Below, in pieces: positions 1 to 38,160 of a stretch of DNA of 64,000 nt (positions within the stretch are counted from its first letter, which is position 1; each line of letters opens with the position of its first letter). Where the stretch lies: the NCBI RefSeq assembly GCF_001194135.2, contig NC_068988.1:28622397-28686396 (forward strand), written 5' to 3'. A program made the translations under genes and the position numbers. Origin of the DNA: Octopus bimaculoides (Eukaryota). Below the pieces are notes generated by a model. That model saw only the letters and a list, made by a program, of their open reading frames with translations, was not told the DNA's origin and did not search any database.

Positions 1-1060
1 AGGTAAAGCTTTAACAGGTTCTCATGAGCTCTTATCTAACGAGAGAAGTGTAGAAGACAGCAAAGACTATCAAGGTCTGTTTATGGAAACATTAATATTG
101 GTAATAAGGTTGACAGAACAGATAACAAAAAAAAACTTGATATTTACATTGATATTCATTAGTTCTATAAATGACTTCCTACTTTTTAACCTAATTAATG
201 AATTGTTCACGGTAAATTTAAGCTTCACTATTTTTCTGTGTCATTATCTTGTTCTCACATTCAAATAAAAATAGATATGGTTGAGGTCACTTCACACCTG
301 TGTAGTTCTGGCTTTGATACCACAGAACAACATTTTGGGAAAACATACTCTTCTACCAGCGTAGCATTGTATTCATACAAATAAAATAGGGGCACAAATT
401 TCAATAAGTGAGCAGCCAAAATTTCTAATAGTTGCTGTTTTAGAAGTGAATTAGGGATCAAGTTTTTGTTAGAACTTTGGTCACGTCAAATATACCCTTT
501 TCTGTTTATGGAACCACAGAGTTCAAAAGGCGGAATTGTGGTAGAATACATTTGATTTTGTATCATATTTTAAAACATATTAATTTATCCTTTGGATCTT
601 TCAAAGGCCAATGAAATAAGAATTTGTAACACAGGTATAAATATTATCCACCATAGTAATTGATAATGCTTTTTAATTAGTTAAAATCAAAAAGATGCAA
701 GTTTAAAACAATCTAGGTGGGATTTTGAATGTTCTGTGTCATATAGTTTTTTTGGTTTTTATTTCTTTTTCCCTCCAGTGGCATCTGTTTGAAAGCTGTT
801 TTAGAATGGTGTTGCCTTGGTAACCAAAGTAAATGAACTGCAGGTTTAAATCTTCGTTCTATGATGATTTCACTGAGTGGCCTTGTGTTGGTGAGCCGAA
901 CTACCCTAAAAATCACATTCAACCATCTTAAAAAGGCAGGGGAAGAATACATTGGATAATGTGATCCAAGATATATTATGTCAGGGAAAAAAGACAAGAT
1001 GGTCATGGCTAGAATGTCCTTGACCACAGGTCTGCTTGATCAGAGTTGACTTGGGTTTAA

Positions 1061-1282
1061 TCCTTTAGCATTTAAACCGGCCATATCAGGTCCAAATATT
1101 TTACCTGTTTTAATATAAAACAGGTAAAACAGCTTTTGTCTCTCATACCTACCCAATTATAATTTTAGAAATTTACAATCACGTCATTGAAATCTCAAAG
1201 CTTCAAGGTAATGCATAATTAATTCAAAATAGAGTGAATAAATAAGCATTACATTTGACAGTGTAATCAGAATGTTGAAGAG
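1061..1282. mobile_element. TTAA-flanked piggyBac-type MITE (partial copies near 3296-3410, 32630-33060, 34080-34190)
   Basis: TTAA at 1057-1060 and 1283-1286; degenerate TIRs tcctttagcatt / aatgttgaagag; internal sequence recurs in the window. Confidence 0.5.
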
Positions 1283-1290
1283 TTAAACAC

Positions 1291-1690
1291 AGTGGAGGTG
1301 CAATGGCCCAGTGGTTAGGGCAGCAGACTAGCAGTCAAAGGATCGCGGTTTCGATTCCCAGACCGGGCGTTGTGAGTGTTTATTGAGCGAAAACACCTAA
1401 AGCTCCACGAGGCTCTGGTAGGGGATGGTGGCGGACCCTGCTGTACTCTTTCACCACAACTTTCTCTCACTCTTTCTTCCTGTAATTCAAAGGGTCAGCC
1501 TTTGTTGTGCCTGTAATTCAAAGGGTCAGCCTTGTCAAACTGTGTCACGCTGAATATCCCCGAGAACTACATTAAGGGTACACGTGTCTGTGGAGTGCTC
1601 AGCCACTTGCACGTTAATTTCATGAGAAGGCTGTTCCGTTGATCGGCTCAACTGGAACCCTCGACGTCGTAAGCAACGGAGTGCCAACAA
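1291..1690 (+). mobile_element. tRNA-derived SINE family D (other copies about 19245-19560 -, 28613-28900 +, 45665-46015 -)
   Basis: tRNA-like head with A box (TGGCCCAGTGG) and B box (GTTTCGATTCC); the body gtggagtgctcagccacttgcacgttaatttc...actggaaccctcg recurs; local 24-bp duplication at about 1480-1532. Confidence 0.75.
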
Positions 1691-1874
1691 ATAAACACAA
1701 TCCTGCTCTCATATAACTATCCCTGTCCCAAGAATACTTAAAAAGTGCTGCAGTTATTTTCATTAACCTCAACACTGCTTCCTCTTCTTCCTTTGTTTCA
1801 CTAAAAACGAATAAGCAACAGATTAAAAATACAGAACAAGAAAGAGTTAAAAGTATTGTTGTTGATATAATTAC

Positions 1875-1987
1875 CTTGATCCATAGCAACCACCGATATT
1901 GTTTGTACAGATGACAAAATATTTGTCTGTGTCAATAGGGTGGCCTGGTCCGATGAATTTTTCCCACCAACCAGGCTCTGGACTTTT
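1875..1987 (-). CDS. cys2: Cys2/MetX-family serine O-acyltransferase, coding exon 3 (gene continues left of the window)
   Basis: ttatag| acceptor, AG|GTAATT donor, 113 nt (phase 0 to 2). Encodes [37 protein letters not shown], the GWW..IGPG..IDT..YFVIC.N..GGCYGS signature of the homoserine/serine O-acyltransferase family. Confidence 0.92.
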
Positions 1988-2149
1988 CTATAAAGAAAGA
2001 GAAAAAGCAAAGTTTAGCTGGTTTTAAACAGCAGAACTTTTAAGTGTATAAAACCATAAAATAATAATTTCAAATTGGCACAAGGCCAGAATTTTTTCGG
2101 GGTGGGGGGAATAGCTGATTACATTGACCCGGTACTCAACTGATATTTA

Positions 2150-2770
2150 TGAGGTCTGATCAATAAGTATCCGGACCGTTGCCATAGTAACGAAGGTAAA
2201 GCATACAGGGTGAAGCTGCATGTCACAGATGGATCCTGAACTCTGCTGTGCATGCACACTAAGTTTTAACATCCTACCTCACTTCTGCTGTTTACAGCAG
2301 TGCTCGGAAGGAAGGTGTGTAGCGTATGATCGTCACATTGACCATGACAGAGAAAGTTGTCATGGCGATACCTGCTCAGAGGCCTACACAAAGTTCCAGA
2401 AAGTGTATGGAGATGAGTGCATGAGCCGCACACAAGTGTACAAATGGTTCAGACATTTCCAAGACTTCCGAAAACATGTTGATATTGATGAACGTTCTGG
2501 GAGACCTGCAACCAGCAGAACTGAGAAAAACATCGCAGATGTGCATGCAGTTGTGAGGGGAAATCGTTGAATCACCATCCGTGAGTTATCAGAGGATGAG
2601 CAGATTAGTTACAGTTCAGTTCAGTCCATTATCACTGAAGATTTGGGTATGAGACGCATGTCTGCTAAGTTTTTGCCGATACTGCTTTCAGCTGACCAAA
2701 AAGACACTCGGGTTTCAGTTGCACAAGATCTCCTTGATTGTGTCAAGAACAATGAAAACTTTGTGTAGTC
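2150..2770 (+). mobile_element. Degenerate mariner transposon, 5' half (TIR and HTH region of the transposase)
   Basis: TA followed by TIR tgaggtctgatcaataagtatccgg; translation SEAYTKFQKVYGDECMSRTQVYKWFRHF...DERSGRPATSRTEKNI...ITIREL...LGMRRMSAKFLP with an internal stop. Confidence 0.85.
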
Positions 2771-2929
2771 CTCTGAACTCAGAATGTAAAGAAGGATAAC
2801 TAAATAAGACACTACTCAGTACCATTTAGTTCAGTGGTGCCTTAAAAAGATGAATTGTTGTGGAACGCCTCTTTGGAAATTTACACCTAAGTTTCAGTTT
2901 TTCTTGCACCCATACAATGAATACGTTAC

Positions 2930-3143
2930 CTTGTGACTTCTTGCATGTGAGCTGGCAGACAGGCCAGTGAATATCATTACAGTGTTGTCTCGGTCTTCGT
3001 TCAGCTCTCCCCAGGTTTCATAAGCAATGTCTAACTGAGGCAATATTCGACCTCCATATTTCATATAGAAAGGTTGATCATATGTGAATACTTCATAGCC
3101 AGACTGAACCAAGTCGTATTGAGGTTCTGGGCCGGATATATTT
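2930..3143 (-). CDS. cys2: Cys2/MetX-family serine O-acyltransferase, coding exon 2
   Basis: ttgcag| acceptor, AAG|GTAACG donor, 214 nt (phase 2 to 0). Encodes NISGPEPQYDLVQSGYEVFTYDQPFYMKYGGRILPQLDIAYETWGELNEDRDNTVMIFTGLSASSHARSHK with the family motifs AYETWG-LN and TGLSASSHA. Confidence 0.9.
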
Positions 3144-3414
3144 CTGCAACAATAAAAATATAAAAGTAATCAATACACGAGTTTGATGAGAGATTTGTGA
3201 ATACCACAGCAAAACAACAAACAAGTAATGTATATGACATCTTGTATCTTTTACTTGTTTCAGTCATTGGACTGCAGCCATGCTGGAGCACCACCTTAAC
3301 ACTAGCATTTAAACTGACCGTATCCAGCCAAAATATCCTACTTTATACTTGAACCAGCCAGATCTGGCATATCATACCTACCCTACAATGTCATTCTAAA
3401 AATAAACAATATAT

Positions 3415-3799
3415 AGGCGTAGGAGTGGCTGTGTGGTAAGTAGCTAGCTTACCAACCACATGGTCTCGGGTTCAGTCCCACTGCACGACCAACCACATGG
3501 TTCCGGGTTCAGTCCCACTGCGCGGCATCTTGGGCAAGTGTCTTCTACTATAGCCTCGGGCCGACCAAAGCCTTGTGAGTGGATTTGGTAGACAGAAACT
3601 GAAGTGCATGTTTGTATGTGTGTGTTTGTCCCCCCAACATCGCTTGACAACCGATGCTGGTGTGTTTATGTACCCGTAACATAGCGGTTCGGCAAAAGAG
3701 ATGGATAGAATAAGTACTAGGCTTCTAAAGAATAAGTCCTGGGGTTGATTTGCTCGACTAAAAGGTAGTGCTCCAGCATGGCCACAGTCTGAAACAGAC
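3415..3799 (+). mobile_element. tRNA-derived SINE family A (copies: 5290-5540 -, 16925-17212 +, 21868-21986 +, 22050-22385 -, 23975-24350 -, 39170-39300 +, 40355-40500 +, 40870-41250 +, 41765-41900 -, 52302-52480 +)
   Basis: Head gtggctgtgtggtaag...ggttcagtccc, body ccttgggcaagtgtcttctactatagcc, tail gactgaaacaagtaaaagag; this copy has a 37-bp internal tandem duplication at about 3450-3525. Coordinates approximate. Confidence 0.85.
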
Positions 3800-4431
3800 N
3801 NNNNNNNNNNNNNNNNNNNNNNNNNNNNNNNNNNNNNNNNNNNNNNNNNNNNNNNNNNNNNNNNNNNNNNNNNNNNNNNNNNNNNNNNNNNNNNNNNNNN
3901 NNNNNNNNNNNNNNNNNNNNNNNNNNNNNNNNNNNNNNNNNNNNNNNNNNNNNNNNNNNNNNNNNNNNNNNNNNNNNNNNNNNNNNNNNNNNNNNNNNNN
4001 NNNNNNNNNNNNNNNNNNNNNNNNNNNNNNNNNNNNNNNNNNNNNNNNNNNNNNNNNNNNNNNNNNNNNNNNNNNNNNNNNNNNNNNNNNNNNNNNNNNN
4101 NNNNNNNNNNNNNNNNNNNNNNNNNNNNNNNNNNNNNNNNNNNNNNNNNNNNNNNNNNNNNNNNNNNNNNNNNNNNNNNNNNNNNNNNNNNNNNNNNNNN
4201 NNNNNNNNNNNNNNNNNNNNNNNNNNNNNNNNNNNNNNNNNNNNNNNNNNNNNNNNNNNNNNNNNNNNNNNNNNNNNNNNNNNNNNNNNNNNNNNNNNNN
4301 NNNNNNNNNNNNNNNNNNNNNNNNNNNNNNNNNNNNNNNNNNNNNNNNNNNNNNNNNNNNNNNNNNNNNNNNNNNNNNNNNNNNNNNNNNNNNNNNNNNN
4401 NNNNNNNNNNNNNNNNNNNNNNNNNNNNNNN
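3800..4431. other. Assembly gap (other gaps: 13470-13479, 25483-25658, 37623-37936, 57288-57537, 61331-61538, 63296-63305)
   Basis: Runs of N. Confidence 1.
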
Positions 4432-5704
4432 AGTAAACAAATTTGGGAGAAAATGGTGGGAGAAAGATTATAAGCAATACATAGCGTCAGAAGAAAACTT
4501 TCGACTGGAAAAAGTAGGAAAGCTGAGACGTTTGAGTTTGATTTATTAGTGGAACGTTAAACGTGTTGACCCATTTTCATTTTTAGAAATGTTACAAGTA
4601 CTTTGCTGGTATTTGAACAAATCGTAATTACAAGAATTAAAGTTGGTCAACAAAAATAGGAAAAAAAAAAATGACCCGCCGGACCATCAATGTATTGCTG
4701 GTCGTTTGGGGGGGGGGGCACACCATGAGTAATGTGGACTAACATATATTTAAAGACGGTTGAAAGGCCTTTTATTATAGGTCTGCTCAATCAGGGGATG
4801 ACATCTGGCTAAATAACTTCTCCACTGACATAGTTTACACACAGTACAAAGAAAATAGGACACAAGAAAGTTTATAACGCAGTCCATTTGGTTGTTTCCT
4901 ATTTTAACGCCGTAAAAAAACACAAAATGAAAATACAGTACTTTTATTAATGAACATTTTCGTGTAAGTGCTGTATTTACTCCTGAATAAGTCGCACTCG
5001 TGTATAAGTAGCCAAAAAGCTATGGACTTTCACTTTCTGACTAAAATAAATGAACGAATAAAGTAGAATTTCCATTGACATAATTGCAACGTATAACCTT
5101 CGAAAATTTAATCGCTGCATAAGTTCGTTAAGAAAAAACAAATAAAAATAAAACAGAATTTATTTATAAAGTTATGAGGAAACAAAGTGGATGTGTGTTA
5201 GTAGAGCACAGACATACTCGGGATATTGAATTATTTGCTAAATGTTATTAGCTGGTCATTGTTATATACAAGCCCCCTTACCACACTGTAAATATAAAAA
5301 TCCTGGTTTCAGTCTTTTGTTGAACTGCTAGATTACGAGGACGTAAATACACCAACATCGGTGGAGGGACAAACACACACACAAACATATATATATGACG
5401 GGGCTTCTTTCAGTCTCCGTCTACCAAATCCACTCACAAGGCTTTGGCAGGCACGAGGCTATAGTAGAAGACACTTGCCTAAGGTGCCACGCAGTGGTAT
5501 TGAACCCGGAACCATGTGGTTGGGAGGCAAGCTTCTTAGTCCCATTTCTCTGTAATATAAACAGATTGGCTGCTTACAAGGATTGGTCAAATAATGTGAA
5601 AGCTTCTGGCAATTATCCAATAAGATTCGAAAATTGATGAAGACGCAATTCATCATTCTTTCTGTATTTTTTTTTTAAATCGACGGAGAAATAGTTAAAA
5701 TTGC

Positions 5705-5933
5705 GGTACTACTAAAGCAGCGCGGACCCGAACGCGCAGTCGCGCGTCCGCGCTAGCTAGTCTTGAGTGATCGATCCTAACCCTAACCCTATCCCTATCC
5801 CTAACCCTGTCCCTAACCCTATCCCTAACCCTAACCCGCGTGTGCAAATGAATACGTGTTTAGGGTTAGGGTTAGGAATAGGGTTAGGATCGACCACTCA
5901 CGACTAGCTAGCTAGCACTGCTTTAGTAGTACC
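5705..5933. mobile_element. 229-bp foldback MITE with 9-bp TSD and inverted telomeric repeats (Merlin- or MULE-type)
   Basis: Perfect 16-bp TIRs GGTACTACTAAAGCAG / CTGCTTTAGTAGTACC; TAAAATTGC direct repeat at 5696-5704 and 5934-5942; (CCCTAA)-like array facing a (TTAGGG)-like array. Confidence 0.85.
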
Positions 5934-6357
5934 TAAAATTGCTATGTTTGTATTTCTCCTACACATATATAAGGCTGTGTGTATTAAAAACACTAATCTT
6001 TAATATATACATACTAGCATACCCGTGTCGTCAAAAATTCCAACATATTTATTATTGATAGGAAATGGAGCGTGTAAGCAACAAGCAGAAAGCATTGAGA
6101 AATGTCAGCAACAAACCGATAAATTAAGTACTGGTATCTATTTGTTTGACTAAATCATGCGGTACTCCAACATGGTTGCAATCCTATAACTGAATTTAAA
6201 TGCGCAAAAACGACAAATAGTAATCAAATAAAGGATTTAATATACGCAAAGAAACAATATTTATTGTAAACAGTTGTCAGTTACTTTGAAATTCGGTCAC
6301 TGGTAGCGTATTGAAACTGACAGCTCGAAAAACCTACGGCAGACCTCTCTTCGAAGC

Positions 6358-6360
<3 letters not shown>

Positions 6361-6418
<58 letters not shown>
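6361..6418. repeat. (TA)n microsatellite
   Basis: Direct read. Confidence 0.95.
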
Positions 6419-6422
<4 letters not shown>

Positions 6423-6994
6423 TATAATTCTTCGCGTTCAAAGATAAGGAGGAGCAGCAAATTTTTAAGTGGTGATGTAAACAGAGAATTGAACAAGAGG
6501 ATATGGGGGATTTGGGGCAAATATGTAGGCTTTTGTCGTGGCGATGTTTTATTTTCTTGTTTTGGTGTTCCTCATCCGTTGCAGTTGCTCTGGTCTTCTC
6601 AAAATTGCTTGCAGTGGTCTAGATGCAACCTTGCCACACATCTCTCTGCTCTGGGCCTCCCTCCCACTACGTAGGGTCCATCTCTGCCTGGGCGGGTTGC
6701 GTTTCAGCTAGTCTTATACCCCTCCTCCGTCACCCACATATATATTACACACTCGCATAGAAATAAAACTACGAGTAAACCATGTGCGTATGTGTGTGTG
6801 TGTAGAAAATCAAAATAATGGTCGGAATTAGCAGAATATTGGCAATTGAAAACACTACTGACACTAAACAAGACTTTATACATGCATATGTCCACGTTTG
6901 CATTTTTAGTTTGTTTACTTTTTGGCAGATATAAGCAATACAGAAAAAAATAATAATAAAAATAGATACAGAACGAATTCCGAAGTTGTCTTAC

Positions 6995-7218
6995 GTTCGA
7001 GAAACGCAGGGAAATTCTGTTTCCATTCCTTTAAAAAGTAAATTGTTTCCGTTTGTTTCTTCTGTTTCTTTGACTTGCGAACTTTTTTGCTTGTAAGCTG
7101 TGACTGGAAGATGCCTTTTGGAAGCTTGGAAAGTTGAAGGAATTGATCGTCGTTGGCATTGAGATATATTTAACAACGATCGACTCAGCTGTCGAAGACA
7201 GAGCTGAACAGAAGTCAT
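6995..7218 (-). CDS. cys2: Cys2/MetX-family serine O-acyltransferase, coding exon 1 (mitochondrial-type presequence)
   Basis: ATG at 7218; acceptor ctttcag 9 nt upstream (exon starts 7227); donor AC|GTAAGA at 6995, phase 2. Peptide MTSVQLCLRQLSRSLLNISQCQRR...EFPCVSR; the FPC motif precedes GPEPxY in Cys2-type proteins. Phase fits the next exon. Confidence 0.8.
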
Positions 7219-8699
7219 TGTTGTTGGCTGAAAGAAGTTAAAGTGGACGGATGTTCTTGGTGGGGAAAAAGTTTATATATGACAGATAAATAGACAAAGG
7301 GAGAGAATTGTGTGTGAGGGTGCGTATATATAAGGGAAAGATAGAGAGAATGTGTATGATAGAGAGGGTGACGGGGCGGGAGTGTGAAAGAGTGACAGAA
7401 AGACAGTGTGTGAAGAAGAGAGAGACAGAGAGTGTGTGTGTGTGTGTGTGACAGAGAAAGAGAGTGTGATCAAGAGAGTATGTGTGACAGAAAGAGAGAG
7501 TGTGTGAAAGAGTAATGGAAAGAGATAGCGTGGCGAAGAGAAAGAGTGTGTGACAAAGAGAGAGAGAGAGAGTGACAAAAAAGAGCGGGAGCTTGTATGT
7601 GTGAAAGAGTGTAGTGAAGAAAGAGAGAGTGAGTAGGTGACAGAAGGAGAAAGTATGAGAGAGGGAAAAAAAAGAAAATGAGAGCGAGGCGAGGAATGTT
7701 CAGTTCAGTTTGTGTTTATGAAATTAACAAGTGTGTGAGATTTCGAGTGTTTATTAGATAGAAGATAAAGAAGCGAGGGAAAATAACTGCAGGGGAAAAG
7801 TTAATGAAGAAGTGTGGTTGGAGTGTGTGTAAGTTTTAAAAATAATTCCTAAGAGAAGTGTGTGTAAACGAAGCGAAGAAAGATCTTTTGTATTTATTAA
7901 AGACAGAAAGGAAAAGAAAGTGAAGATATGTATTATTTTGTTAGGAGAAAAGTGTAAGAATGACGCCGTGAAGTGATAAGCAAATGTTTCTTTCGAAAAT
8001 GAACGATATATTACTTTCGTAAATAGATAAATCCCATATACAAAGTGAGAAGTTCTATTGTTGTCTCTGATCACCCCCTTATTTGAGTTTAGTTGTACCC
8101 TCTGGTCGGTGACTCATTTACTCTGCACAAATTTCTGTTGCCTAATATAATTTGTATCTACACAATACACATACATGATGTGTTAGAGCTGCTGTAGTTC
8201 ATAGAACTGGATGGGTACAGTAAATATTTCCTGCAGACCCAATGGTGGAGTGAAAGGTGACGCTGAAGCTGACTGGTTGGCTTTGAACAGGTTCATAAAT
8301 AATCGAAACTAATGACTACTCAGTACATCACCATCTGTGTCACCCTTACAGACTTGATAATATCACAATAAATTGTATTAAGATAATAATAATAGCTTCA
8401 AATTTGGGCACAAAACCAGTAATTTTTAAGAAGTGGGAATTAATTGCATATTTTATGATTTACGTTTTCGTGTTTTTGAAATAACGGACTGCAGTTAAAG
8501 TTTCATAGTATATATTTGAAAGAATTACAGAAACTCGGTGATTTGTCATTAAAGTTAGGAACATCTAGGACTTATAAAATGAGTATTCACTCAGTAGCTG
8601 GTCTGGAGCCATAAAAAAACAAGGAAGAACCAGGAAATACCTGACAAGGCCCATAAAGTGGCCTCGTTCTACCTCGCAAAATTTCTCCAGGTAATCTTG

Positions 8700-8763
8700 G
8701 GCGGAAGTAAAGAATACGTACACCACCAAAAACCTCTGAGTGTACGTATTCTTTCCTTTCGCC
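8700..8763. mobile_element. 64-bp hairpin/MITE (related copy about 17266-17363)
   Basis: 24-bp inverted repeats ggcggaagtaaagaatacgtacac / gtgtacgtattctttcctttcgcc (2 mismatches); no clear TSD. Confidence 0.55.
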
Positions 8764-8854
8764 AGGCCTTCTATGAGTGTGCTTGCCTGCATGTGTGTGA
8801 AGGTGTGTGTGTCTGTACATGCGTGTGTGTTTGTTGTGCGTGTTGTGTAAGCTG

Positions 8855-9110
8855 AAGCCCGCAGAGTGAAACCGCTTGGAACAGATTGACCGTCAACTCT
8901 GCTGTGCATGCGCACTAAGTTTTAACGTTCTAGCTCACTTCCGCTGTTTACAGCAGTACTTGGAAGGAAGGTGTGTAGTGTGTGATCGTCACATTGACCA
9001 TGAAAGGGAAAGTTGAGCAGAGAACCGGCATCAAAAGCTTGGCGATACCTTCTCAGAGGCCTACACAAAGTTTTCAAAAAGTTTTCCTTGCTCTTGACAC
9101 AATCAAGAAG
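8855..9110 (+). mobile_element. Second, rearranged mariner fragment of the same family
   Basis: 8900-9060 matches 2240-2400; about 9062-9108 is the reverse complement of about 2712-2758. Confidence 0.75.
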
Positions 9111-9787
9111 ATCCTGTGCAACTGAAACTCTTATTCATGAGCAGCACAGGCGTGTTTTTTCAATCCTGCTAGGGACCTATACTCTTTTGTACAGGATGTG
9201 GCAATGATGGGCACTTCTTGCAGCAGGTGTTCAGAGAGCTGACCACCCACGTTGATACATGCTGTCATTCCGTCATGAAGTTTTTCTTTTGAGTGTTTTC
9301 CCTGTTTCGGTTACGGCCAGCCATAGTATGCAACATATGCAACGCATAGCAAAAATGTTAACTGAGATGTTGAAAAATTCAAGCGTTGGCCGTGCTTGAA
9401 GCTTTTTAAAGCGAGGAAAAGTCTTGCACATTCTCCAAACAACGAATATATTGGCCCCCTAATAAAAAAAAAACCTTGTCTTCATCATTGAATGCAAACA
9501 AAGTCGTAGGTGTTACATCAGTTTTCCTTCCCCAAAAGAGATGGTTGATCAAAGACGAAGTATCTTTCACTCCAAACTGATGGATGGTTGTTGACTTAAC
9601 TGAGTTCAGCCGCCCTTTGACATATCTTGATTTCTGTCCTGCAAGGTCTCCAACAAAAACCACTCATTTTACCAAGCCGACTCGATACGTTCGCCGATTT
9701 AGTCGCCCCTGCTCCAACCACGTGACAGGTTGTACCAGGTTACAAGTTACCAGTAGCAGTAAGAGTGACTTGAATTATATTGACTGA

Positions 9788-10215
9788 CTAGCAGAGATAC
9801 CCGGCGTTGCCCGTGTTACATGCAATTGAAGAATGAGACTTTTCTGTTATATTTTCTTTAAGGAACTGGAATACCTATGATTCGAATTTCATCAAAATTG
9901 CACATGAGGCTTCTTTCCCTCTTTACACACCCTAAAAAAATTCTAATCATGACACATTTATCCCATACTAATGATCTTTATGCGCATATTCCAAAATTCC
10001 AGTCTTCTGGAACCTATAAAAAGGATTTTGCTCATATAAAATGGAGCTCATGGAGCTCTAAAATGTGGGAATGAAGGCCCCTGTTGGGGGTGGGGGTGTT
10101 AATGTCAACCAGAGAAGTTGAATTGTTGGGAATGTTTTTAACTTGGGTCTTATAGTATGCCTGTATATATGTGAAAGTATAGTTTCACTTTAATAGTTTC
10201 AGTATGAAACTCCTG
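9788..10215 (+). mobile_element. Possible non-autonomous Helitron/Helentron-like element
   Basis: Terminal actagc...acccggcgttgcccg motif resembles Helentron/HINE ends; the other end is not defined. Confidence 0.3.
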
Positions 10216-10235
10216 GCAACCAATATCTTTATACC

Positions 10236-10457
10236 CAGTCCGCCACTAATCGAGGGTGTTACGTTCCCAAAACCCCCAGCGATAGGTGAAAATCCGCGAA
10301 GTAGAAACAGTACTGTACTCTATGTTTTTTTAAAATTAGTTTCATAATTTTTATATATTTATTTTATTGTAAATACAAAACAACACTACAGAAGAATCGA
10401 CGTAAGCTTAAATAATAAACCGCGATAGGTGAGCCGCGATATGGCGAGGGATTACTG
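10236..10457. mobile_element. pogo/Tigger-type MITE
   Basis: Right end cgcgatatggcgagggattactg and left-end sequence gggtgttacgttcccaaaacccccagcgataggtgaaaatccgcgaagtag resemble Tigger-type MITE termini. Confidence 0.5.
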
Positions 10458-11494
10458 CATATGAATCAATTTACACGTCCTTTACATTGGACAGATGCAG
10501 TGTTGCCGGAAGAAAAAATTCTGTTGTAACAAGAAACACGTTTTTTTATATAATTTTACTTATGTCTAATGAGTCCTCATTACCCCGAAGAATTTAATTT
10601 TTACCCCACTTGGGGTAATTTATCCCGGTTCTCCGACCCTTGAATTAACCCCTTCAATGCGGTGCTTTAGCTTTGTTCTGTAGCCAGTTACATTCCGAAA
10701 TCGGTTACTGCAAGTTTTGAATAATTTTAAGAACAATTTTGCTTGCATGGACTATGAAATCATTGCATCTTCGTACATTGCTGCCGTAGACCATGTTTAA
10801 AATTCCTGGTGTAAATTATCTTCTGAATTATCTTATATTTTGTATTTGTGTCGGCATTCGTTGTCTGTGTAAACGTGAGAAGAAAAAACCCAATGTATTT
10901 TTGATTATAGATAATGGCGAATTAATTGTAAAAAGAGGAGAGTCTAAATGCCCTTCTAAATAGGAATTTTACCATAAGTATTTTGTATGTGTGGACATCT
11001 ATACATTTTGTATCTGTGTGCCCATGTAACATCAAAATGTTTAAGCGTGACAAAGATAATATATTCGTAATCACGGATGAGAGGAAAATTTAAATGCTTT
11101 TCTCAGTAAGAACTTTTACCATCTCTAATTTGCGGGGATATTTGCTGTCTCCATGTAACATCAAAATAGATTGGTGTGACAAGAATAATGTATACGTACT
11201 CACGAATACCTTCTTTTATCGTTTATCTTTCACTTGTTTCAGTCTTTGGACAGCTGCCACGCTGGAGCACCACCTTGAAGGGTCTAGTCCGGGGGTTCTC
11301 AACCATTTTTTTAATCTATGGACCTCTTTTATTAATATTTTATTCTAGTGGACCCCTGTAACTATTCTATGTTTAAAAACTAGTTTTTAAAAATTTCTTT
11401 CCAAATTCCTATTTGATTTTTCACACAGTAACGTGTGTAGGTTGAACTACGTAAAATGTTATGGAAAGAAACGTAGCTGTTTCTCGAAATACAT

Positions 11495-12280
11495 GGTGCC
11501 ACTCTAGCGTTCGGTCTACCGCAGAATCCTACTTTAGCGTGCAGTCAACTGCAGTATCCTGTCTACGCTGTGAAATTACTTTTAGCGTGCCGTCTGCTTT
11601 TCTTACCCTTTTACACTTTAGCGTGCGATCTACCTCCACTATGAGAACTTTATACTACAGGATGATAAAAACAAATTGAATAATGTTGAATAATGGTTTA
11701 TTAATAACTTAAACTTAAATCTTAATTAACGATACTCACTTCATACATAATGTTCTTCATGATTCACTGTAAAATGGCGATAACCCATGGCATTTAGATT
11801 AGAATATACGGGCCATTACTTAATTATTGAATCTTTTTCACATTCCCGCTCAATGATTGGTCATAGAGTGTTTCTGTCACGCCGTTGCACATAGAAGTAT
11901 CGACAGTCAGAGCTTTGTTTCAGACTAAAGACCCACGGACCATCAATTCTACGTCCATGGTTCCTGTTATTTTGTACATCTACGTAATTTTCTTGAGCAA
12001 GAGGAGCATTGTCGCCATTTAGCAGTCTCCCACGATTGTATTTCCGTCAACCAGCAAATCTTGAATTATTGATACCTGACAGCTCGAAGACTAAGCAGGG
12101 AGTTGAAGAGATCTAATTACGGTGTTGTAGGGAATAGTTTGTGTTACAGAAGATTAACTACAATGAAATAGAGAACGGCAAGAGTAGCATAGCCAGACTG
12201 TGTGCTGTCTGGAGCAACCTTTGAGTTTGCTGCCTTGCACTGGGCCCTCAAGACTATACGAACTTATGCAGCAAACCCAA
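11495..12280 (-). mobile_element. Merlin (IS1595/IS1016-like) transposon relic, 3' end with disrupted DDE transposase
   Basis: Minus-strand translation of about 12020-11741: NRNHGRRIDGPWVFSLKQSSDCRYFYVQRRDRNTL*PIIERECEKDSIIK*WPVYSNLNAH / GYRHFTVNHEEHYV, matching the WVF..RD..TL.PII..W..Y..L..GY.H..VNH pattern. Terminus GGTGCC at 11495 with four subterminal ACTTTAGCGTGC-like repeats. Confidence 0.75.
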
Positions 12281-12284
12281 AAGA

Positions 12285-12480
12285 ACCGCCCCTAAACATA
12301 GAGGGGACAAACAAGGACAGACAAAGTGATTAAGTCGATTACTGGTATTTAATTTATCGACCCCGAAAGAATGAAAGGCAAAGTCAACCGCGGCGGAATT
12401 TGAACTCAGAACGTAACGGCAGATGAAATACCGCTAAGCATTTCGCCCGGCGTGCTAACGTGTCTGCCAGCTCGCCGCCT
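12285..12480 (-). mobile_element. tRNA-derived SINE family C (copies about 22395-22560 +, 45110-45280 -, 46268-46680 + x2, 54465-55290 - x4, 55560-55730 -)
   Basis: Head gagctggcaga...ttagca...ctgagttcaaattcc (A/B boxes), body gtcgactttgcctttcatcctttcggggtcgataaattaa; many copies. Confidence 0.85.
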
Positions 12481-12979
12481 TCTGAAAAGTAAACTAGGTT
12501 CAGCACAAAATGGGTCTTAACTTTCACACTAGCAAGAACTATATTAGTAAATTTTATATTTGAGAAGGTCATGTGACACTGTTAACGTCTAGAAAACAGC
12601 CCTCATCTAGCAGCTTCATGGTAAAGGAGGTTACGTTAAGTATTCTTTGCAGATTTTGGGGTAACGTGTTATTTTTAGAAATATGTTGTTTTCCCTGCCT
12701 TTCTTACTAGTTAGTATCTGGTTTCGTAACATTTATACAAAACTGTCTAGCTTTTTATCAGTAATGTGTACCAAGTGTTGGACTCATTTGGGTTAATTTT
12801 GACATTAACATCCCCACGATTTTCACTAAGAAAAAAAAAATTTACAGTAGACTACAGAGAGTCACGTGGAGACGAAATGGTTGTACTTCGACCGGGAGAT
12901 CCAAGACTGGGACAGTATAGCCCTTTTCCTTTAAGTTAAGACGATCACACACACACACACAGATATATATATATATAAG

Positions 12980-13469
12980 GAACGACCGTGCGAACTCAAA
13001 AAAGGAGAAATGGTGACGAATGGAAAAACAGAGGACTCCTTTTATTTAAACGTGTCACACGGTCGAACACACAAATATATATATCAATGATGATATACAA
13101 AATATGTTATGCTGATGCGACGACGGCGGTGGTCATCGTTGGCTGGACGAAGCTGTTGAAGTGGTCGCTGGCTGATTGTTGCTGCTGCTGTCGTGTGGTA
13201 CACGGAGCAGTCTCTAAGAGAAACTGGACCGAGACGAATTTGCTGGGTATGAGTTGATCTATTTAAGGCGTTAAGGGGGCTCCAAGACGGTAGTAGGAAA
13301 ACACTATCACGTGACCTTATTAAGGGCTGTGATTGGTCAGTTTGCGTTCTGGCGGGAACGGTTCGAAGAAGTTGCCGATTCGAATAATGATCAGTCACGT
13401 GATGACAAGGTTGATGTTTTCCGCTACGTCCGCGTTTGTCTATATTTAAATGAGAAGAATGGCGATAGC
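12980..13469 (-). mobile_element. Possible solo-LTR-like element
   Basis: CpG-rich island in AT-rich DNA; on the minus strand it has two CACGTG, a CCAATCA box, a TTAAATA TATA-like box and then AATAAA; bounded by (TA)n and an N-gap, so TG..CA ends cannot be checked. Confidence 0.3.
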
Positions 13470-13581
13470 NNNNNNNNNNACACACACACACACACACACA
13501 CATATATACATACACGTTTATATATTTGTTTTGCAAGATTCTTGATGTGAAATAGTGTGTTGAAACAGATATTGTTGTATT

Positions 13582-13798
13582 TTGTATTTGGGGATGGTCA
13601 TGCTGCCAGTTTAGCCAATAAAAACACACGCACTATATATTTGGTGCTAATTTGCTTCAGCCTTATATTACATTAATCGTATTTTTTCGTACATTAAATA
13701 CGATTAATGTAATATAAATCTGAAGCAAATTAGCACCAAATATATAGTGCGTGTGTTTTTATTGGCTAAACTGGCAACATGACCATCCCCAAATACAA
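13582..13798. repeat. Near-perfect long palindrome (103-bp arms, 11-nt spacer), probably a foldback MITE
   Basis: 13582-13684 versus the reverse complement of 13696-13798: 3 mismatches by manual alignment. Confidence 0.9.
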
Positions 13799-14379
13799 CA
13801 ATATATATATATATATTCTTGGTAGTCTTCCGAAATTGCAGTCTTGGTGGTCTTCCGTAATTTTTTTTCCTTAGTGAAAATCGTGCGGGTGTTAATATCA
13901 AAATTTACCGCAAAATAAGCACGTGCTTGGAGCATCAAAGAAAGGACATGCCACCACAGAACCAGTAAATGGTTTTACAGCATAAAAGAAATCACTTTAA
14001 ACTTGCTAAAAGAATATTTGGGATATATATACATACACACGCAACATACAGAGAGAGAGAAAGGGAGAGACATTACACATGTTCAAACAATTGGAACATA
14101 ATTAGATACACAGACACATAAACAGAGAGAGAGATAGAGAAACATTAAAGCGTCTGATGTCAAATAAGTCAGCGTCTCAGCGATGCCAAAACGGCTGCGC
14201 CGAAACGTCTCGTATTCCATCTTATTTCACTAAATACGTATTTGAAGAAGATATATTGTATTTTAATCTCATTTCACTCTGACATCAGTGACATCTATGT
14301 AACAAAATTTATTATCAGTTGTAGTTGTTGACGATAAGCTCAAACTTTTCCATAAAATCTCGCAAACATTGCAGTGAAA

Positions 14380-15090
14380 TAAAAAAACCTGAACTTCAAG
14401 CACGTAAACTTTCCATGTACCTTTTAAATTACAGCGCCGCCACCGCCATCTCGATATTGATGACAAAGACTATCATCTGGAACACCCGAAAGAATGTATC
14501 TTTTCGATTTGTGTTGAATAGTTTATCGGTCAAAAGAAACATTAGACGTTTTGTTTGACCTATTTCACTTACATCTGATATTATCTCTCTTCTCTGAGAT
14601 AATTCACTGATTCAGATATTTGTTCTTGGTATTGTAGGCCACTAAACTATCTACTAATTTCTACTAAGTTCAGTATTTCACTACTGAATTTATATCGGCT
14701 GTCTTGTTTCTGAGCGCAGCACATAGCTTATAATAAAGATAGGATATCACTATACAGGCATACCTCACCTACATCGTTAATTGGTTCCAGCAGACACGAC
14801 TAAAGTCGAATTAACTTGTTTCTTGGCTAGGCTAGGCCGAATTTACTTGTCTCGAGGCTAAACCGATAATAACCATTCCCAGTCCTGTACTTTATTTATG
14901 AATGCATTGTCAATAATAAATATTTGATTTTAAAAAAAAACTATTTAAAACTTACAAACAAATAATTTTTTAATACAGTACAGTAAAAAAAAAGTAATCT
15001 AAATTTGCGAATAACAAGTTGGCGGTGTTTACTGTGCATCGCAGACGCTTTATGAATGCAGTTTGCAATAAGACATGGTAAAATATGAGC
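14380..15090. promoter_or_regulatory. Possible bidirectional promoter between the cys2-like gene and the plus-strand gene
   Basis: Minus strand: gagATGGCGGTGGCGGCG at about 14432-14452 followed by donor-like sites. Plus strand: CpG-containing stretch at about 15015-15080 ending in ACATG|GTAAAA. Both flanking genes have acceptors upstream of their ATG, so both need upstream 5'UTR exons. Confidence 0.3.
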
Positions 15091-15295
15091 TCCGAAAGAC
15101 CGATAAATAAGACAACGTAGCTGATTTCATGATTTCGTTCACTAAGCTACACTACTTTATGGTGTGTATCTTAACGTTTACTAGTTCCCTACGGTTTCAC
15201 GAAGAAATCGATAATTGACCACTGAAATTGAGGCATTGCTTGAAAAGATTTTAACTGACTATTTTTATGAATAAATTCAGAAAAATCTCTCTATA

Positions 15296-15298
<3 letters not shown>

Positions 15299-15357
<59 letters not shown>
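15299..15357. repeat. (CT)n microsatellite
   Basis: Direct read. Confidence 0.95.
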
Positions 15358-15368
<11 letters not shown>

Positions 15369-18262
15369 ACCTGTATGCACGTAGTTTTACTATTATTTGA
15401 AACGCATTTGGAACAAAACGTAAAAACGCTGTGGTAACAGCTACAGTACGAAACAACTTTTAACTGAAATATTTACAAGATCCTGAAATAAGAGCGAGAT
15501 AAATAGTATAGGATGTTACATCCTGGTGTTAAATAACTTGCATCCCATAGCTAAATAACTTCATAACAGATACAGTATATAAAACCATAGCTGTTGAAGC
15601 TAGGATAGAGGATCTTTCTGAATTGAAAAGTGGTGTCCGTCAATTCATAAAGATCCAGGATTGACTCTGTAACCGTAACCACAGCAATAGATAACTTGTT
15701 CAAAGTTACTTGATGCAAGTTCAGTTGAACTTATTTAAAATGCGTTTCCCGAGCAAGTGACGTAAGAGAAAATATCAAATATCAACAGTCATTCAATTTC
15801 CATCGTAAAAGACAAGCTTTCAGACGGATAACGTATTTGATGATTATACCCGTTTATTTATTTATCTATTATCCAATCATTGAAATAATAACTGATGTTA
15901 AATAGACACACTAATTATAAGATGTCGTCTGCATTCAGCTAACAGGTGAATTGCAAAACAAAACGTTTCTTTGTATTTATAATGAATTGTCAACTCTTTA
16001 CAACGCGTTCTTCTTGCTATCTTGTTCATTTGATGAAATTTCTGGTCTCACATTTTCGTTTTCAGCGATTAAGTTTTTATTTTGTGCTTTGGTTTCAATC
16101 TCGCCTATTGTCCATATATGAATTCATTCGTTATTACTAAATTTTACTGGTTTCATGTGACGAATGAGCCAGATGTTTTCGCCAAGCGGCTCGAATCTCT
16201 AACCTGATTTCACTATCTGATAATGGCTTTGAGAAAAGATTAAATTCTCTTCAGCTGTTAACCTAGCGAAGTATTTTAGCTATGTTAAAAAAATTGTTTC
16301 TAATGACATATCAACTTAGGCGAAAAATAAATGAGATATCAATTTAAAAGTAAGTTTCGTTTTCTGGTAGTTTAACATTCTAGTTCGTGTTCATCGTTAA
16401 GGCTTTTATCTGAAACATATAAAGTTTCCTCTTCCCGTTACCAAAAAACTAGAGAAGAAAATATAAATAAAAGAAACCTTAGCATACAAAATAATATTCG
16501 GTTTTATTGAAATAATTAGGGTGATATGATCATTATCACAACTGTTTTTCATTTGATACGTTCGACCTTTAGTTCTCAACTACGAAGAAAAACGTGAAGA
16601 GAAGGATTTTTTTGGCTTTGTTTTCTTTTCTAAGCAATGAATAATCCTACACAGAGATTTTATTATTTTCTGTGATATCAGTACATAATCTATAGTACCC
16701 TTCATACTTTTATCTAACCTCGTAGAGAATGTTAAAAAGTGAAAGTAACTTGATATCCTGGCAGATTGTTTTCTGCGCATTATCTGTGCGCGCGCACGCG
16801 TATATATTTGATTAATTCAACGATATAAATTCCTTTTAAAAGGGTGTAAGCATCCAAGTTATATTCAGTGTATCAGTGAAAAACCAAAAGATGTTGGCTT
16901 CGCATTGATGGATATGGGTAAATCATCAAAGCCTTGGGCCGACCAAAGCCTTGCGAGTGGATTTGGTAGACGGAAACTGAAAGCCCGTCGTATATATGTG
17001 TGTGTGTGTGTCTGTGTTTGTCCCCCCACCATCGCTTGACAACCGATGCTGGAGTGTTTACGTCCCCGTAACTTAGCGGTTCGGCAAAAAGAGACCAATA
17101 GAATAAGTAGTAGGCTTACAAAGAATAAGTCCTGGGGTCGATTTTCTCGACTAAAGGCGGTGCTCCAGCATGGCCACAGTCAAATGACTGAAACAAGTAA
17201 AAGAGTAAAAGTGAATTTATGTATGAGAAAAAGAAAACGGATTAATTGACATATAGACATCAATTTGGCAAAAGTAAAGAATACGCACAGCCTGTGTTTA
17301 AGGTTTAGGGTTAGGGTTTTTGTTACGCCGAAAACGGATGGTGTACGTATTCTTTATCTCCGCAATAAATCTATTAAAATAAATTCAATTCCGAACAATA
17401 TCAAACTCATAGAACCTACAATCGTTTCCATGTCCAATTGATTCAAATTAGAGAAATTAAATTAAATTAAAGATTCATATTGAATATAGTTACTTGAGCA
17501 TTTCGTCAGGGTAAGAATTTGATAGAAAAAGAACTACATCCCAATGTATTGGCTGATCATTGATAGACCCAGTCTTAAATTTAGATATGTGCGCTTACGG
17601 TGTGGGGGCGGAGTCCTGGATTTTTTGCGGGGTGTTGCCCAAAAGTTTTGAAAAAAATACGATATAAGTGGAATATCAGCCATTACTTATCAAAATTAAT
17701 CGATTTTTTTTCTTGAGGCCTATGACTCATAAGGCTGGTTACCCGCTTTCCATGAGATATAAGTGGCCGGGATCTCAACATGCCCCATAATAGGATACCA
17801 GTTAGTTACAGGGTTCAAGACCAGTAATTTTGAAGAGAAGAGATAAGCCGATTACATCGACCCCTGTACACGTGTGCACATAGATATATATGTTATACGA
17901 CACACAGTTCCAGCTATCAAATTGACTCACAAGGCACAAACCAGTCCAGGGCCATAGCAGACGACACTTGCCTAAGGGGACTGAACTCCAAACGACGTCA
18001 TTACCAAGCCAGCTTCTTAACCACACAGCCTTGTCAGTGCCTATTAAAAGGTTTCTGAGGAGGGATATTTTTAGTAATCAAAGCATTACAAATAAGATCA
18101 AGATCGAATCGTGCTTTCAAAGCCCTTTCTACTTATTCCCTTTGTTCTGTCTTCCTCTCTCTGCTCTCTCTCTCTCGTTTTGTTTTATTTTTCTCTCATC
18201 TGTTCCATTTCTTTATTTCTGTTCTGCAGATGTGAATGAAATATATTTATTATTGACGAACT

Positions 18263-33119: not shown

Positions 33120-33600
33120 TAGTGTTTTGAGAGAGAAGTCAGGCATAAGAGGAATTAGTTGCTGTGTGCAAGAGAGAAGACTGCGCTAGTTTGGTCATGT
33201 GATGCGGATGGATGCTGACAGCTCCAAAAACTGCCGATCTTCCAAAGTAAAAGGAACATGTGGAAGTGGGAGACCCACGAAGACATGGGACGAAGTACTG
33301 AAGAACAACCTCAGGATGCTGAACCTTTCAAGCAGGATGACAAAGGCACAAGACGCCTGGCACCTTGCCATACTCTGCAGCAGGAGTGTTAAGACCGGTC
33401 CCTCTGGTGGTGAAAAGCATTTGTGGTGGTGTCACATAAAAACACCCAGCACACACTGTACAATGGTTGGCACATTAGGAAGGGCATCCAACCACAGAAA
33501 CCATGCAAAACCAGACTGGTGTCTGGTGCAGCTCTCCAGCTCTGGTCAAACCATCCAACCCATGTCAGCATAGATAATGGACATTAAATGATGATGATAA
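33120..33600 (+). mobile_element. Degenerate RTE LINE 3' fragment in the last ALYREF intron
   Basis: GIRGISCCVQERRLR*FGHVMRMDADSSKNC...GSGRPTKTWDEVL followed by a degenerate RTE tail ending in (GAT)n. Confidence 0.75.
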
Positions 33601-37274: not shown

Positions 37275-38160
37275 AGTAAAAGGCAGACTGTATGACACAT
37301 GCGTACGAACAACCATGCTACATGGCAGTGAAACATGGGCTGTAACTGCTGAGGACATACGTAAGCTCGCAAGGAATGAAGCCAGTATGCTCCGTTGGAT
37401 GTGTAATGTCAATGTGAATACCCGTCAGAGTGTAAGTATCTTGAGAGAAAAGCTGAACATTAGAAGCATCAGTTGTGGCGTGCAAGAGAGACAATTGCGC
37501 TGGTATGGACATGTGGTGAGAATGGAGGAGGATAGCTGCGTGAAAAAGTGCCACACCCTAACAGTTGAGGGAACCCGTGGAAGAGGTAGGCCCAGGAAGA
37601 CCTGGGCTGAGGTGGTGAGGCANNNNNNNNNNNNNNNNNNNNNNNNNNNNNNNNNNNNNNNNNNNNNNNNNNNNNNNNNNNNNNNNNNNNNNNNNNNNNN
37701 NNNNNNNNNNNNNNNNNNNNNNNNNNNNNNNNNNNNNNNNNNNNNNNNNNNNNNNNNNNNNNNNNNNNNNNNNNNNNNNNNNNNNNNNNNNNNNNNNNNN
37801 NNNNNNNNNNNNNNNNNNNNNNNNNNNNNNNNNNNNNNNNNNNNNNNNNNNNNNNNNNNNNNNNNNNNNNNNNNNNNNNNNNNNNNNNNNNNNNNNNNNN
37901 NNNNNNNNNNNNNNNNNNNNNNNNNNNNNNNNNNNNGGCACATAAAAGACACCATTTCGAGCGTGGCCATTTTCGTGCGGGTGACACGTAAAAGCACCCA
38001 CTACACTCTCTAAGTGGTTGGCGTTAGGAAGGGCATCCAGCTGTAGAAACTCTGCCAAATCAGACTGGAGCCTGGTGTTGCCGTCCGGTTTCACCAGTCC
38101 TCAGTCAAATCGTCCAACCCATGCTAGCATGGAGGGCGGACGTTAAACGATGATGATGAT
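37275..38160 (+). mobile_element. RTE-clade LINE 3' end (ORF C-terminus, gap, 3'UTR, (GAT)n tail)
   Basis: MLHGSETWAVT...RKLARNEASMLRWMC...LRWYGHVVRM...RGRGRPRKTW is a typical RTE C-terminus; after the N-gap come the 3'UTR and gatgatgatgat tail. Confidence 0.9.

What the first reader, a model, noticed from the sequence alone, without database searches (positions are those of the whole stretch)
1875..7227. Intron-containing animal Cys2-type serine O-succinyltransferase: a fungal-style de novo cysteine pathway in a probable cephalopod
Seen in the sequence: three GT-AG exons in compatible phase encode MetX-family motifs (AYETWG-LN, GWW..IGPG..IDT, GGCYGS). Established knowledge: the loop TGLSA(SSHA) is the serine-accepting type (fungal Cys2/CysA; DcsE has TGLSP), not the HALTG of homoserine acetyltransferases. 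Vertebrates make cysteine only by transsulfuration; a Cys2 plus cysteine-synthase route has been reported in animals such as Acropora corals. Inference: this animal can make O-succinylserine and hence cysteine from serine and sulfide. Spliceosomal introns full of host SINEs argue against bacterial or fungal contamination. The pathway is known from other invertebrates but little studied in cephalopods.
Basis: partly seen in the sequence, partly recalled or inferred. Interest (0 to 1): 0.72.

Follow-up and report, generated by a model that had tools for sequence, protein, structure and literature searches.

The report
Octopus Cys2 serine O-succinyltransferase gene start
The window holds the first three exons of the Octopus bimaculoides Cys2-type serine O-succinyltransferase gene, a real animal gene that is already annotated and whose cysteine pathway in molluscs was published in 2022.

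Summary
On the minus strand, three GT-AG exons (7218-6995, 3143-2930, 1987-1875) splice in frame into a 183-residue N-terminal fragment of a MetX-family acyltransferase. The N gap (3800-4431) lies inside intron 1 and hides no coding sequence.

The fragment is 183/183 identical to residues 1-183 of Octopus bimaculoides XP_014767701.1 (LOC106867363, 464 aa). The window matches chromosome CM046608.1 of assembly GCA_001194135.2 at 100%. Exons 4-11 lie 1.4-8.5 kb beyond the window's left end; the 11-exon CDS there is intact.

- The fragment falls in the MetX-G3c (Cys2) clade with 98.5% bootstrap support.
- It carries the Gly-Leu-Ser-Ala loop typical of serine-accepting enzymes.
- The full protein has Ser-Leu, the conserved Arg and Asp, and the Ser/Asp/His catalytic triad.
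- An octopus Cys1a partner enzyme is already catalogued.

It is not new. Salazar et al. 2022 reported Cys2 and Cys1a in all animal phyla except vertebrates, arthropods and nematodes, with an oyster Cys2 as the mollusc example. NCBI already names the O. sinensis, O. vulgaris and Argonauta orthologues serine O-succinyltransferase. Substrate and acyl-donor use in octopus remain inferred by homology. Interest is low.

The parts
6995..7218 (-). Coding exon 1 (224 nt). It starts at the ATG at 7218 and encodes residues 1-75. These cover a basic, acid-free N-terminal 49 aa and the animal-type F-K-G-M-E-T-E-F-P-C motif.
   Evidence: The donor is gtaaga. The translation is identical to XP_014767701.1. 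The first 49 aa hold 8 R/K and 0 D/E.
3144..6994 (-). Intron 1 (3851 nt). It contains the 632-N assembly gap at 3800-4431, interspersed-repeat copies at 3406-3799 and 5313-5538, a (TA)33 run at 6361-6426, and a palindrome at 5698-5940.
   Evidence: The junction is collinear with orthologues.
2930..3143 (-). Coding exon 2 (214 nt), residues 75-146: GPEPQYD...AYETWGELN...TGLSASSHARSHK.
   Evidence: The acceptor is ttgttgcag and the donor is gtaacg.
2954..2965 (-). Codons for Gly135-Leu136-Ser137-Ala138, the serine-type substrate loop of MetX-G3 enzymes.
   Evidence: The signature is defined in PMC9506716. DcsE has GLSP and its engineered variant has ALSG.
1988..2929 (-). Intron 2 (942 nt). It holds a decayed Mos1/mariner-type transposase remnant on the + strand, at about 2370-2770.
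   Evidence: Pfam HTH_48 scores E = 3e-07, and the remnant has an in-frame stop.
1875..1987 (-). Coding exon 3 (113 nt), residues 147-183 plus 2 nt: [37 protein letters not shown].
   Evidence: The acceptor is tttatag and the donor is gtaatt.
1..1874 (-). First 1874 nt of intron 3. It contains no coding exon. Exon 4 lies 1382 nt beyond the window's left end.
   Evidence: tblastn finds no further exon here. The exon map comes from L001.

Best explanation
This is the 5' part (exons 1-3 of 11) of the nuclear Octopus bimaculoides gene LOC106867363. It encodes a Cys2-type (MetX-G3c) L-serine O-succinyltransferase.

Inferred mechanism:
1. The alpha/beta-hydrolase enzyme uses its Ser232/Asp395/His429 triad in a ping-pong reaction.
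2. It takes the acyl group from succinyl-CoA onto Ser232 and passes it to the hydroxyl of L-serine.
3. The Gly-Leu-Ser-Ala loop encoded in exon 2, together with Ser-Leu, Arg269 and Asp430, gives the preference for serine over homoserine.
4. The product, O-succinyl-L-serine, is then converted with sulfide to cysteine by the octopus Cys1a homologue.

Shown here: the gene structure, the species, the family and subgroup placement, the signature residues, and the existence of the partner gene.

Inferred by homology only: the substrate, the acyl donor, the flux in vivo, and a possible mitochondrial location suggested by the basic N-terminus.
For: - Exon structure and phases.
- 183/183 identity to XP_014767701.1.
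- The window is 100% identical to CM046608.1 of GCA_001194135.2.
- An intact 11-exon CDS.
- Abhydrolase_1 domain on the full protein.
- The best solved relative is DcsE, a serine O-acetyltransferase (3vvl).
- Identity ranking G3c > G3a > G1/G2 > G3b.
- NJ bootstrap 98.5% for the G3c clade including the fragment.
- All SST signature residues and the triad.
- 59% identity over 433 aa to Acropora digitifera Cys2 (P0349). That protein differs only slightly from A. loripes Acys2 in the data S3 listing. Acys2 rescues S. pombe cys2-delta (PMC9506716).
- Octopus Cys1a, A0A0L8GIK4, is 66% identical to the validated Acys1a.
- NCBI names the O. sinensis, O. vulgaris and Argonauta hians orthologues 'serine O-succinyltransferase(-like)'.
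Against: - No biochemical or expression data for any cephalopod enzyme were seen.
- The acyl donor (succinyl- or acetyl-CoA) cannot be read from the sequence with the tools used. The closest solved structure, DcsE, uses acetyl-CoA, and older database names say 'serine O-acetyltransferase cys2'.
- The window itself holds only 39% of the codons. The catalytic residues were read from the public locus, not from the window.
- The tree is a simple NJ tree on 104 columns.
- O. bimaculoides also has CBS (A0A0L8H496), so this route need not be the main source of cysteine.
- The source of sulfide in an animal is open.
Confidence: 0.9

Rival explanations
1. It is a homoserine O-acetyltransferase (Met2/MetX-G1 type) that works in methionine biosynthesis, as the original RefSeq name ('homoserine O-acetyltransferase-like') and the top NCBIfam models suggest.
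For: The best NCBIfam models are named MetX homoserine O-acetyltransferase. PDB depositors call the relatives homoserine O-acetyltransferase. The older name of XP_014767701.1 says the same.
Against: - All NCBIfam scores are far below the curated cut-offs (116 bits against 331).
- Identity to the G1/G2 references is 36-45%, against 52-66% to G3c.
- The G3c clade has 98.5% bootstrap support.
- The loop is G-L-S-A, not A-L-[ST]-G, and Arg269 stands where G1/G2 have Asn.
- More than 60% of MetX annotations are reported to be wrong (PMC9506716).
Confidence: 0.03
2. It belongs to the same Cys2 clade but uses acetyl-CoA. That would make it a serine O-acetyltransferase producing O-acetylserine, like DcsE, rather than a succinyltransferase.
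For: The closest solved structure is DcsE. Several orthologues are named 'serine O-acetyltransferase cys2' in databases.
Against: S. pombe Cys2 is reported to be primarily an SST, and Acropora Acys2 rescues cys2-delta upstream of an O-succinylserine sulfhydrylase (PMC9506716). The octopus protein is much closer to these proteins than to the bacterial G3a references, the DcsE-like group with the GLSP loop.
Confidence: 0.06
3. It is a decaying or truncated gene fragment, or a misassembly around the gap, with no function.
For: The window shows only three exons, one gap and introns rich in transposons.
Against: - The complete 11-exon ORF is intact in the public locus.
- The orthologues in O. sinensis and O. 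vulgaris have the same length (464 aa) and are 96% identical over the fragment.
- All catalytic and signature residues are kept.
Confidence: 0.01

Closest known systems
Octopus bimaculoides LOC106867363 (XP_014767701.1; UniProt A0A0L8I294) and its orthologues: O. sinensis XP_029640115.1 'serine O-succinyltransferase', O. vulgaris CAI9726862.1 and Argonauta hians GAB1600525.1
   Same: It is the same gene. The spliced fragment is 183/183 identical to XP_014767701.1, and the window DNA is 100% identical to the public chromosome. The other two Octopus species are 96% identical over the fragment, and Argonauta is 66%.
   Different: Nothing differs in sequence. The O. bimaculoides record is still labelled 'uncharacterized protein' or 'AB hydrolase-1 domain-containing protein', whereas the sister species carry the functional name.
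Animal Cys2 (MetX-G3c) of Salazar et al. 2022, for example Acropora loripes Acys2 and Crassostrea gigas K1Q6X7
   Same: It shares the clade, the F-[KR]-G-x-x-x-x-F-P-C N-terminal motif, the GLSA loop, Ser-Leu, Arg and Asp, and the catalytic triad. Identity to Acropora Cys2 is 59% over 433 aa.
   Different: The octopus protein was not in the paper's Cys2 list; the paper used an oyster for Mollusca. It has not been tested by complementation.
Fungal Cys2/CysA (S. pombe Q10341, A. nidulans CysA)
   Same: It shares the same MetX-G3c group and the TGLSASSHA loop. Identity over the fragment core is 58-63%.
   Different: The N-terminal extension differs. The animal proteins form their own subgroup in the published tree.
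DcsE of Streptomyces lavendulae (PDB 3vvl)
   Same: It is the best solved-structure match (E = 2e-25) and has a serine-type G-L-S-P loop.
   Different: DcsE is bacterial and serves in D-cycloserine synthesis (from my own knowledge of the 3vvl entry, not from a tool result). It uses acetyl-CoA and has Pro instead of Ala at the fourth loop position.

Membership tests
MetX family (alpha/beta-hydrolase O-acyltransferases) | Significant sequence match to MetX models and to solved MetX structures | tested here: met
   NCBIfam MetX models score E = 1e-33 to 1e-24 on the 109-aa fragment. Sixteen PDB MetX-type chains match.
MetX family (alpha/beta-hydrolase O-acyltransferases) | Alpha/beta-hydrolase domain with a Ser-Asp-His catalytic triad | tested here: met
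   The full-length P0269 matches Abhydrolase_1 at E = 8e-28. Ser232, Asp395 and His429 align with H. influenzae S143, D304 and H337. These residues are encoded outside the window, in L001.
MetX-G3c / Cys2 serine O-succinyltransferase | Gly-Leu-Ser-Ala/Pro at X. campestris positions 52-55 | tested here: met
   G135-L136-S137-A138 is encoded at window 2954-2965 on the minus strand. The criterion comes from PMC9506716.
MetX-G3c / Cys2 serine O-succinyltransferase | Ser-Leu/Met (not Ser-Tyr) at positions 149-150 | tested here: met
   S232-L233 in P0269. These residues are off-window.
MetX-G3c / Cys2 serine O-succinyltransferase | Arg at Frateuria position 183 and Asp at X. campestris position 360 | tested here: met
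   R269 and D430 in P0269. The G1/G2 references have Asn at the Arg position. These residues are off-window.
MetX-G3c / Cys2 serine O-succinyltransferase | Phylogenetic placement within the G3c clade | tested here: met
   An NJ tree on 104 columns with 33 sequences (the window fragment plus 32 references taken from the paper's data S3) gives 98.5% bootstrap support for G3c plus the window fragment. The identity ranking agrees. No ML tree was run.
MetX-G3c / Cys2 serine O-succinyltransferase | Measured preference for L-serine and succinyl-CoA; rescue of cys2-delta | not testable with these tools
   This needs a recombinant enzyme or yeast complementation. So far this has been done only for the S. 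pombe and Acropora proteins.
O-succinylserine pathway (Cys2 + Cys1a) | A Cys1a-type O-succinylserine sulfhydrylase in the same genome | tested here: met
   O. bimaculoides A0A0L8GIK4 is classed as Cys1a in data S3 of PMC9506716. It is 66% identical to the validated Acys1a. Its locus was not examined here.
MetX-G1 homoserine O-acetyltransferase | Ala-Leu/Trp-Thr/Ser-Gly loop, and grouping with HAT sequences | tested here: not met
   The loop is GLSA. Identity to the G1 references is 36-40%. The fragment falls outside the G1/G2 cluster.

The most novel reading that the evidence does not exclude
The octopus enzyme has a basic, acid-free N-terminus that looks like a presequence. It might therefore work inside mitochondria, next to the succinyl-CoA supply, with Cys1a. 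Its main role could then be to capture sulfide (detoxification or H2S handling) rather than to supply cysteine, alongside an intact CBS route. Nothing here tests this. It rests only on N-terminal composition and on the co-presence of CBS.
Probability: 0.1. Interest if true: 0.4.

Novelty: already known. Interest (0 to 1): 0.1.

Why it matters
The finding matters little beyond correct annotation. The gene is in RefSeq and UniProt. Its orthologues in sister octopus species already carry the name serine O-succinyltransferase. The presence of the Cys2/Cys1a route across non-vertebrate, non-arthropod, non-nematode animals, molluscs included, was published in 2022.

The practical gain is small. The O. 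bimaculoides record ('uncharacterized protein') could be renamed. Cephalopod nutrition and aquaculture work could note that octopuses probably have a second route to cysteine. That claim still needs an enzyme assay.

Tried and rejected
- Pfam on the 109-aa fragment and on the exon 1 peptide gave no hit. The fragment is too short for Abhydrolase_1; the full protein does hit.
- The first word-index protein search returned only short proteins of 190 aa or less, with a best identity of 70%. It therefore missed the octopus entry.
- The exhaustive search of representatives gave only 60%-identical cluster representatives.
- The octopus protein was found only after I extended the query with the C-terminal part of P0121 as bait. 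The 84% identity in that table reflects the chimeric query. The real comparison is.
- tblastn for downstream exons in window 1-1874, and anywhere else in the window, found none. They lie outside the window.
- ARAGORN and Rfam found nothing in the window.
- A Pfam scan of ten long ORFs elsewhere in the window gave only one sub-threshold ALG10 hit.
- Literature searches found no paper on a cephalopod serine O-succinyltransferase.
- Contamination and pseudogene readings were considered and rejected (see the rival explanations).
Full report
**Observation**

The gene lies on the minus strand. The exact exon borders, all with canonical splice sites, are:
- Exon 1: 7218-6995 (224 nt), donor gtaaga.
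- Exon 2: 3143-2930 (214 nt), acceptor ttgttgcag, donor gtaacg.
- Exon 3: 1987-1875 (113 nt), acceptor tttatag, donor gtaatt.

The phases fit. Exon 1 ends after two bases of a codon, and exons 1+2 total 438 nt. The splice gives a 183-residue peptide plus two bases of the next codon. The ATG at 7218 is preceded by an in-frame stop 19 codons upstream.

The match is far beyond chance. NCBIfam MetX models score down to E = 1e-33, and the PDB search gives E = 2e-25. tblastn with four Cys2 proteins from other phyla finds exactly these three stretches and no other credible match in the 64 kb.

**The gap**

The 632-N gap (3800-4431) lies inside intron 1 (3144-6994). Its left flank is a copy of an interspersed repeat that is cut off by the gap.

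The exon 1/exon 2 junction reads FPCVSRT|NISGPEPQYD. It aligns without any insertion or deletion to orthologues from independently assembled genomes: O. vulgaris and O. sinensis (96% identical over the fragment), Argonauta hians, Lingula and Acropora. No coding exon is hidden in the gap. The same gap exists in the public assembly.

**Identity of the locus**

The first protein search returned only short proteins and missed the source species. A query extended with a homologue's C-terminus found Octopus bimaculoides LOC106867363.

The window's 183 residues are 183/183 identical to its N-terminus. The accessions are XP_014767701.1 and UniProt A0A0L8I294. The record was formerly named 'homoserine O-acetyltransferase-like' and is now 'uncharacterized protein'.

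The encoding contig is chromosome record CM046608.1 (97.8 Mb) of assembly GCA_001194135.2. Window 1-17218 is 100% identical to it in reverse orientation.

A spliced reconstruction on that locus gives 11 coding exons, all GT-AG, totalling 1395 nt. They translate exactly to the 464-aa protein. Exons 4-11 lie 1.4-8.5 kb beyond the left end of the window. The window therefore holds 39% of the codons.

**What the protein is**

Reference sequences of the MetX groups were taken from data S3 of Salazar et al. 2022 (PMC9506716). Several results place the protein in the MetX-G3c (Cys2) group.

Identity over the conserved core:

| Reference group | Identity to the window fragment |
|---|---|
| MetX-G3c (Cys2/CysA, animal Cys2) | 52-66% |
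| G3a | 44-50% |
| G1/G2 | 36-45% |
| G3b | 21-25% |

- A neighbour-joining tree on 104 columns puts the fragment inside G3c, among the animal sequences. Bootstrap support for the clade is 98.5%.
- The paper lists the residues held to define serine O-succinyltransferase activity. All are present in the octopus protein: Gly135-Leu136-Ser137-Ala138 (encoded in the window at 2954-2965), Ser232-Leu233, Arg269 and Asp430.
- The Ser232/Asp395/His429 triad aligns with the H. influenzae enzyme's catalytic residues.
- The best solved relative is DcsE (3vvl). Its loop is GLSP, and its engineered variant (3vvm) has ALSG there. That DcsE is a serine O-acetyltransferase, and that the variant was made to resemble the homoserine enzymes, comes from my own knowledge of those entries and not from a tool result.
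- The full protein carries an Abhydrolase_1 domain.
- It is 59% identical over 433 aa to Acropora digitifera Cys2. That protein differs only slightly from A. loripes Acys2 in the data S3 listing. Acys2 rescues S. pombe cys2-delta.

**Pathway context**

The same paper's data S3 lists O. bimaculoides A0A0L8GIK4 as a Cys1a-type synthase and A0A0L8H496 as CBS. The octopus Cys1a is 66% identical to the functionally validated Acropora Acys1a.

The octopus therefore has both the partner enzyme and the classical transsulfuration enzyme. The claim that it actually makes cysteine from serine and sulfide is inference. Neither octopus protein has been assayed, and the source of the sulfide is open.

**Mechanism**

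By homology, Ser232 is acylated by succinyl-CoA, and the acyl group is passed to the hydroxyl of L-serine. The GLSA loop, Ser-Leu, Arg269 and Asp430 shape the pocket for serine. Cys1a then replaces the succinate with sulfide.

The family, subgroup and residues are shown here. The substrate, the acyl donor and the flux are inferred. The first 49 residues have 8 Arg/Lys and no Asp/Glu. This composition suggests a mitochondrial presequence, but that was not tested.

**Rival readings**

- *Homoserine O-acetyltransferase.* The database names suggest it, but the scores are far below the curated cut-offs, and the loop, the Arg position and the tree all speak against it.
- *Acetyl- rather than succinyl-CoA as donor.* This cannot be excluded from sequence.
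- *Contamination.* Excluded by the introns, the chromosome context and the orthologues in three other octopods.
- *Pseudogene.* Excluded by the intact CDS and the conservation.

**Novelty**

The finding is already known.
- Salazar et al. 2022 state that Cys2 and Cys1a occur across all animal phyla except vertebrates, arthropods and nematodes. They list Crassostrea gigas K1Q6X7 as the mollusc MetX-G3c.
- NCBI names the orthologues in O. sinensis ('serine O-succinyltransferase'), O. vulgaris and Argonauta hians ('serine O-succinyltransferase-like').
- No paper in the searched library treats the cephalopod enzyme itself.

**Surroundings**

- Intron 2 holds a decayed Mos1-type transposase remnant.
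- Intron 1 holds interspersed-repeat copies with 8-9 relatives in the window, a (TA)33 run, and a 240-nt palindrome with telomere-like arms.
- No tRNA or Rfam family is found in the window.
- Long ORFs elsewhere gave nothing above threshold.

**Verdict**

The novelty class is 'already known', and the interest is low.

Noticed in passing
window 5698-5940: A palindromic element of about 240 nt sits inside intron 1. It has 26-nt outer inverted repeats (85% complementary) and inner arms made of telomere-like CCCTAA/TTAGGG repeats facing each other across a 25-55 nt spacer. It could be a hairpin-forming or MITE-like insertion. Its origin is unknown.
   Followed up: partly
window about 2370-2770 (+ strand), intron 2; a visibly similar stretch near 8860-9130: This is a decayed Mos1/mariner-type transposase N-terminus with an in-frame stop (Pfam HTH_48, E = 3e-07). 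The related stretch upstream of the gene (read by eye, not aligned) suggests a dispersed family.
   Followed up: partly
window 3406-3799 and 5313-5538 (inverted); also 1504-1662: An interspersed repeat has 8-9 further copies in the 64-kb window. It contains a 37-nt internal duplication at 3451-3521. ARAGORN and Rfam see no tRNA-like part, so the label 'SINE' is unproven here.
   Followed up: partly
window 7260-7700: A purine-rich GA/GT low-complexity tract with several short tandem arrays lies directly upstream of the start codon. GC skew is +0.32 in the 6001-8000 bin. This is the presumed promoter/5' region of the gene.
   Followed up: no
window 7072-7218 (-), residues 1-49: The N-terminus has 8 Arg/Lys, 12 Ser/Thr and no acidic residue before position 51. 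This is the composition of a mitochondrial presequence. An 'RRSIP' motif also occurs in Acropora Cys2.
   Followed up: no
window 50244-50684 (-): An ORF gives a weak, sub-threshold Pfam match to DIE2/ALG10 (E = 0.001; 18.9 bits against a cut-off of 27). It may be an exon of a neighbouring gene or a chance match.
   Followed up: no
window 33199-33573 (+) and 37315-37620 (+): Two ORFs contain '...GRPRKTW...' and 'LRWYGHVVRM' motifs, which I recall from the C-terminal ends of retrotransposon ORF2 proteins. Pfam gave no hit, and the second ORF runs into an N gap.
   Followed up: partly
L001 28430-34345 (outside the window, downstream of the gene): The next called gene downstream of the Cys2 gene, on the opposite strand, encodes a 213-aa product with a STEEP1 domain (PF25809).
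   Followed up: no
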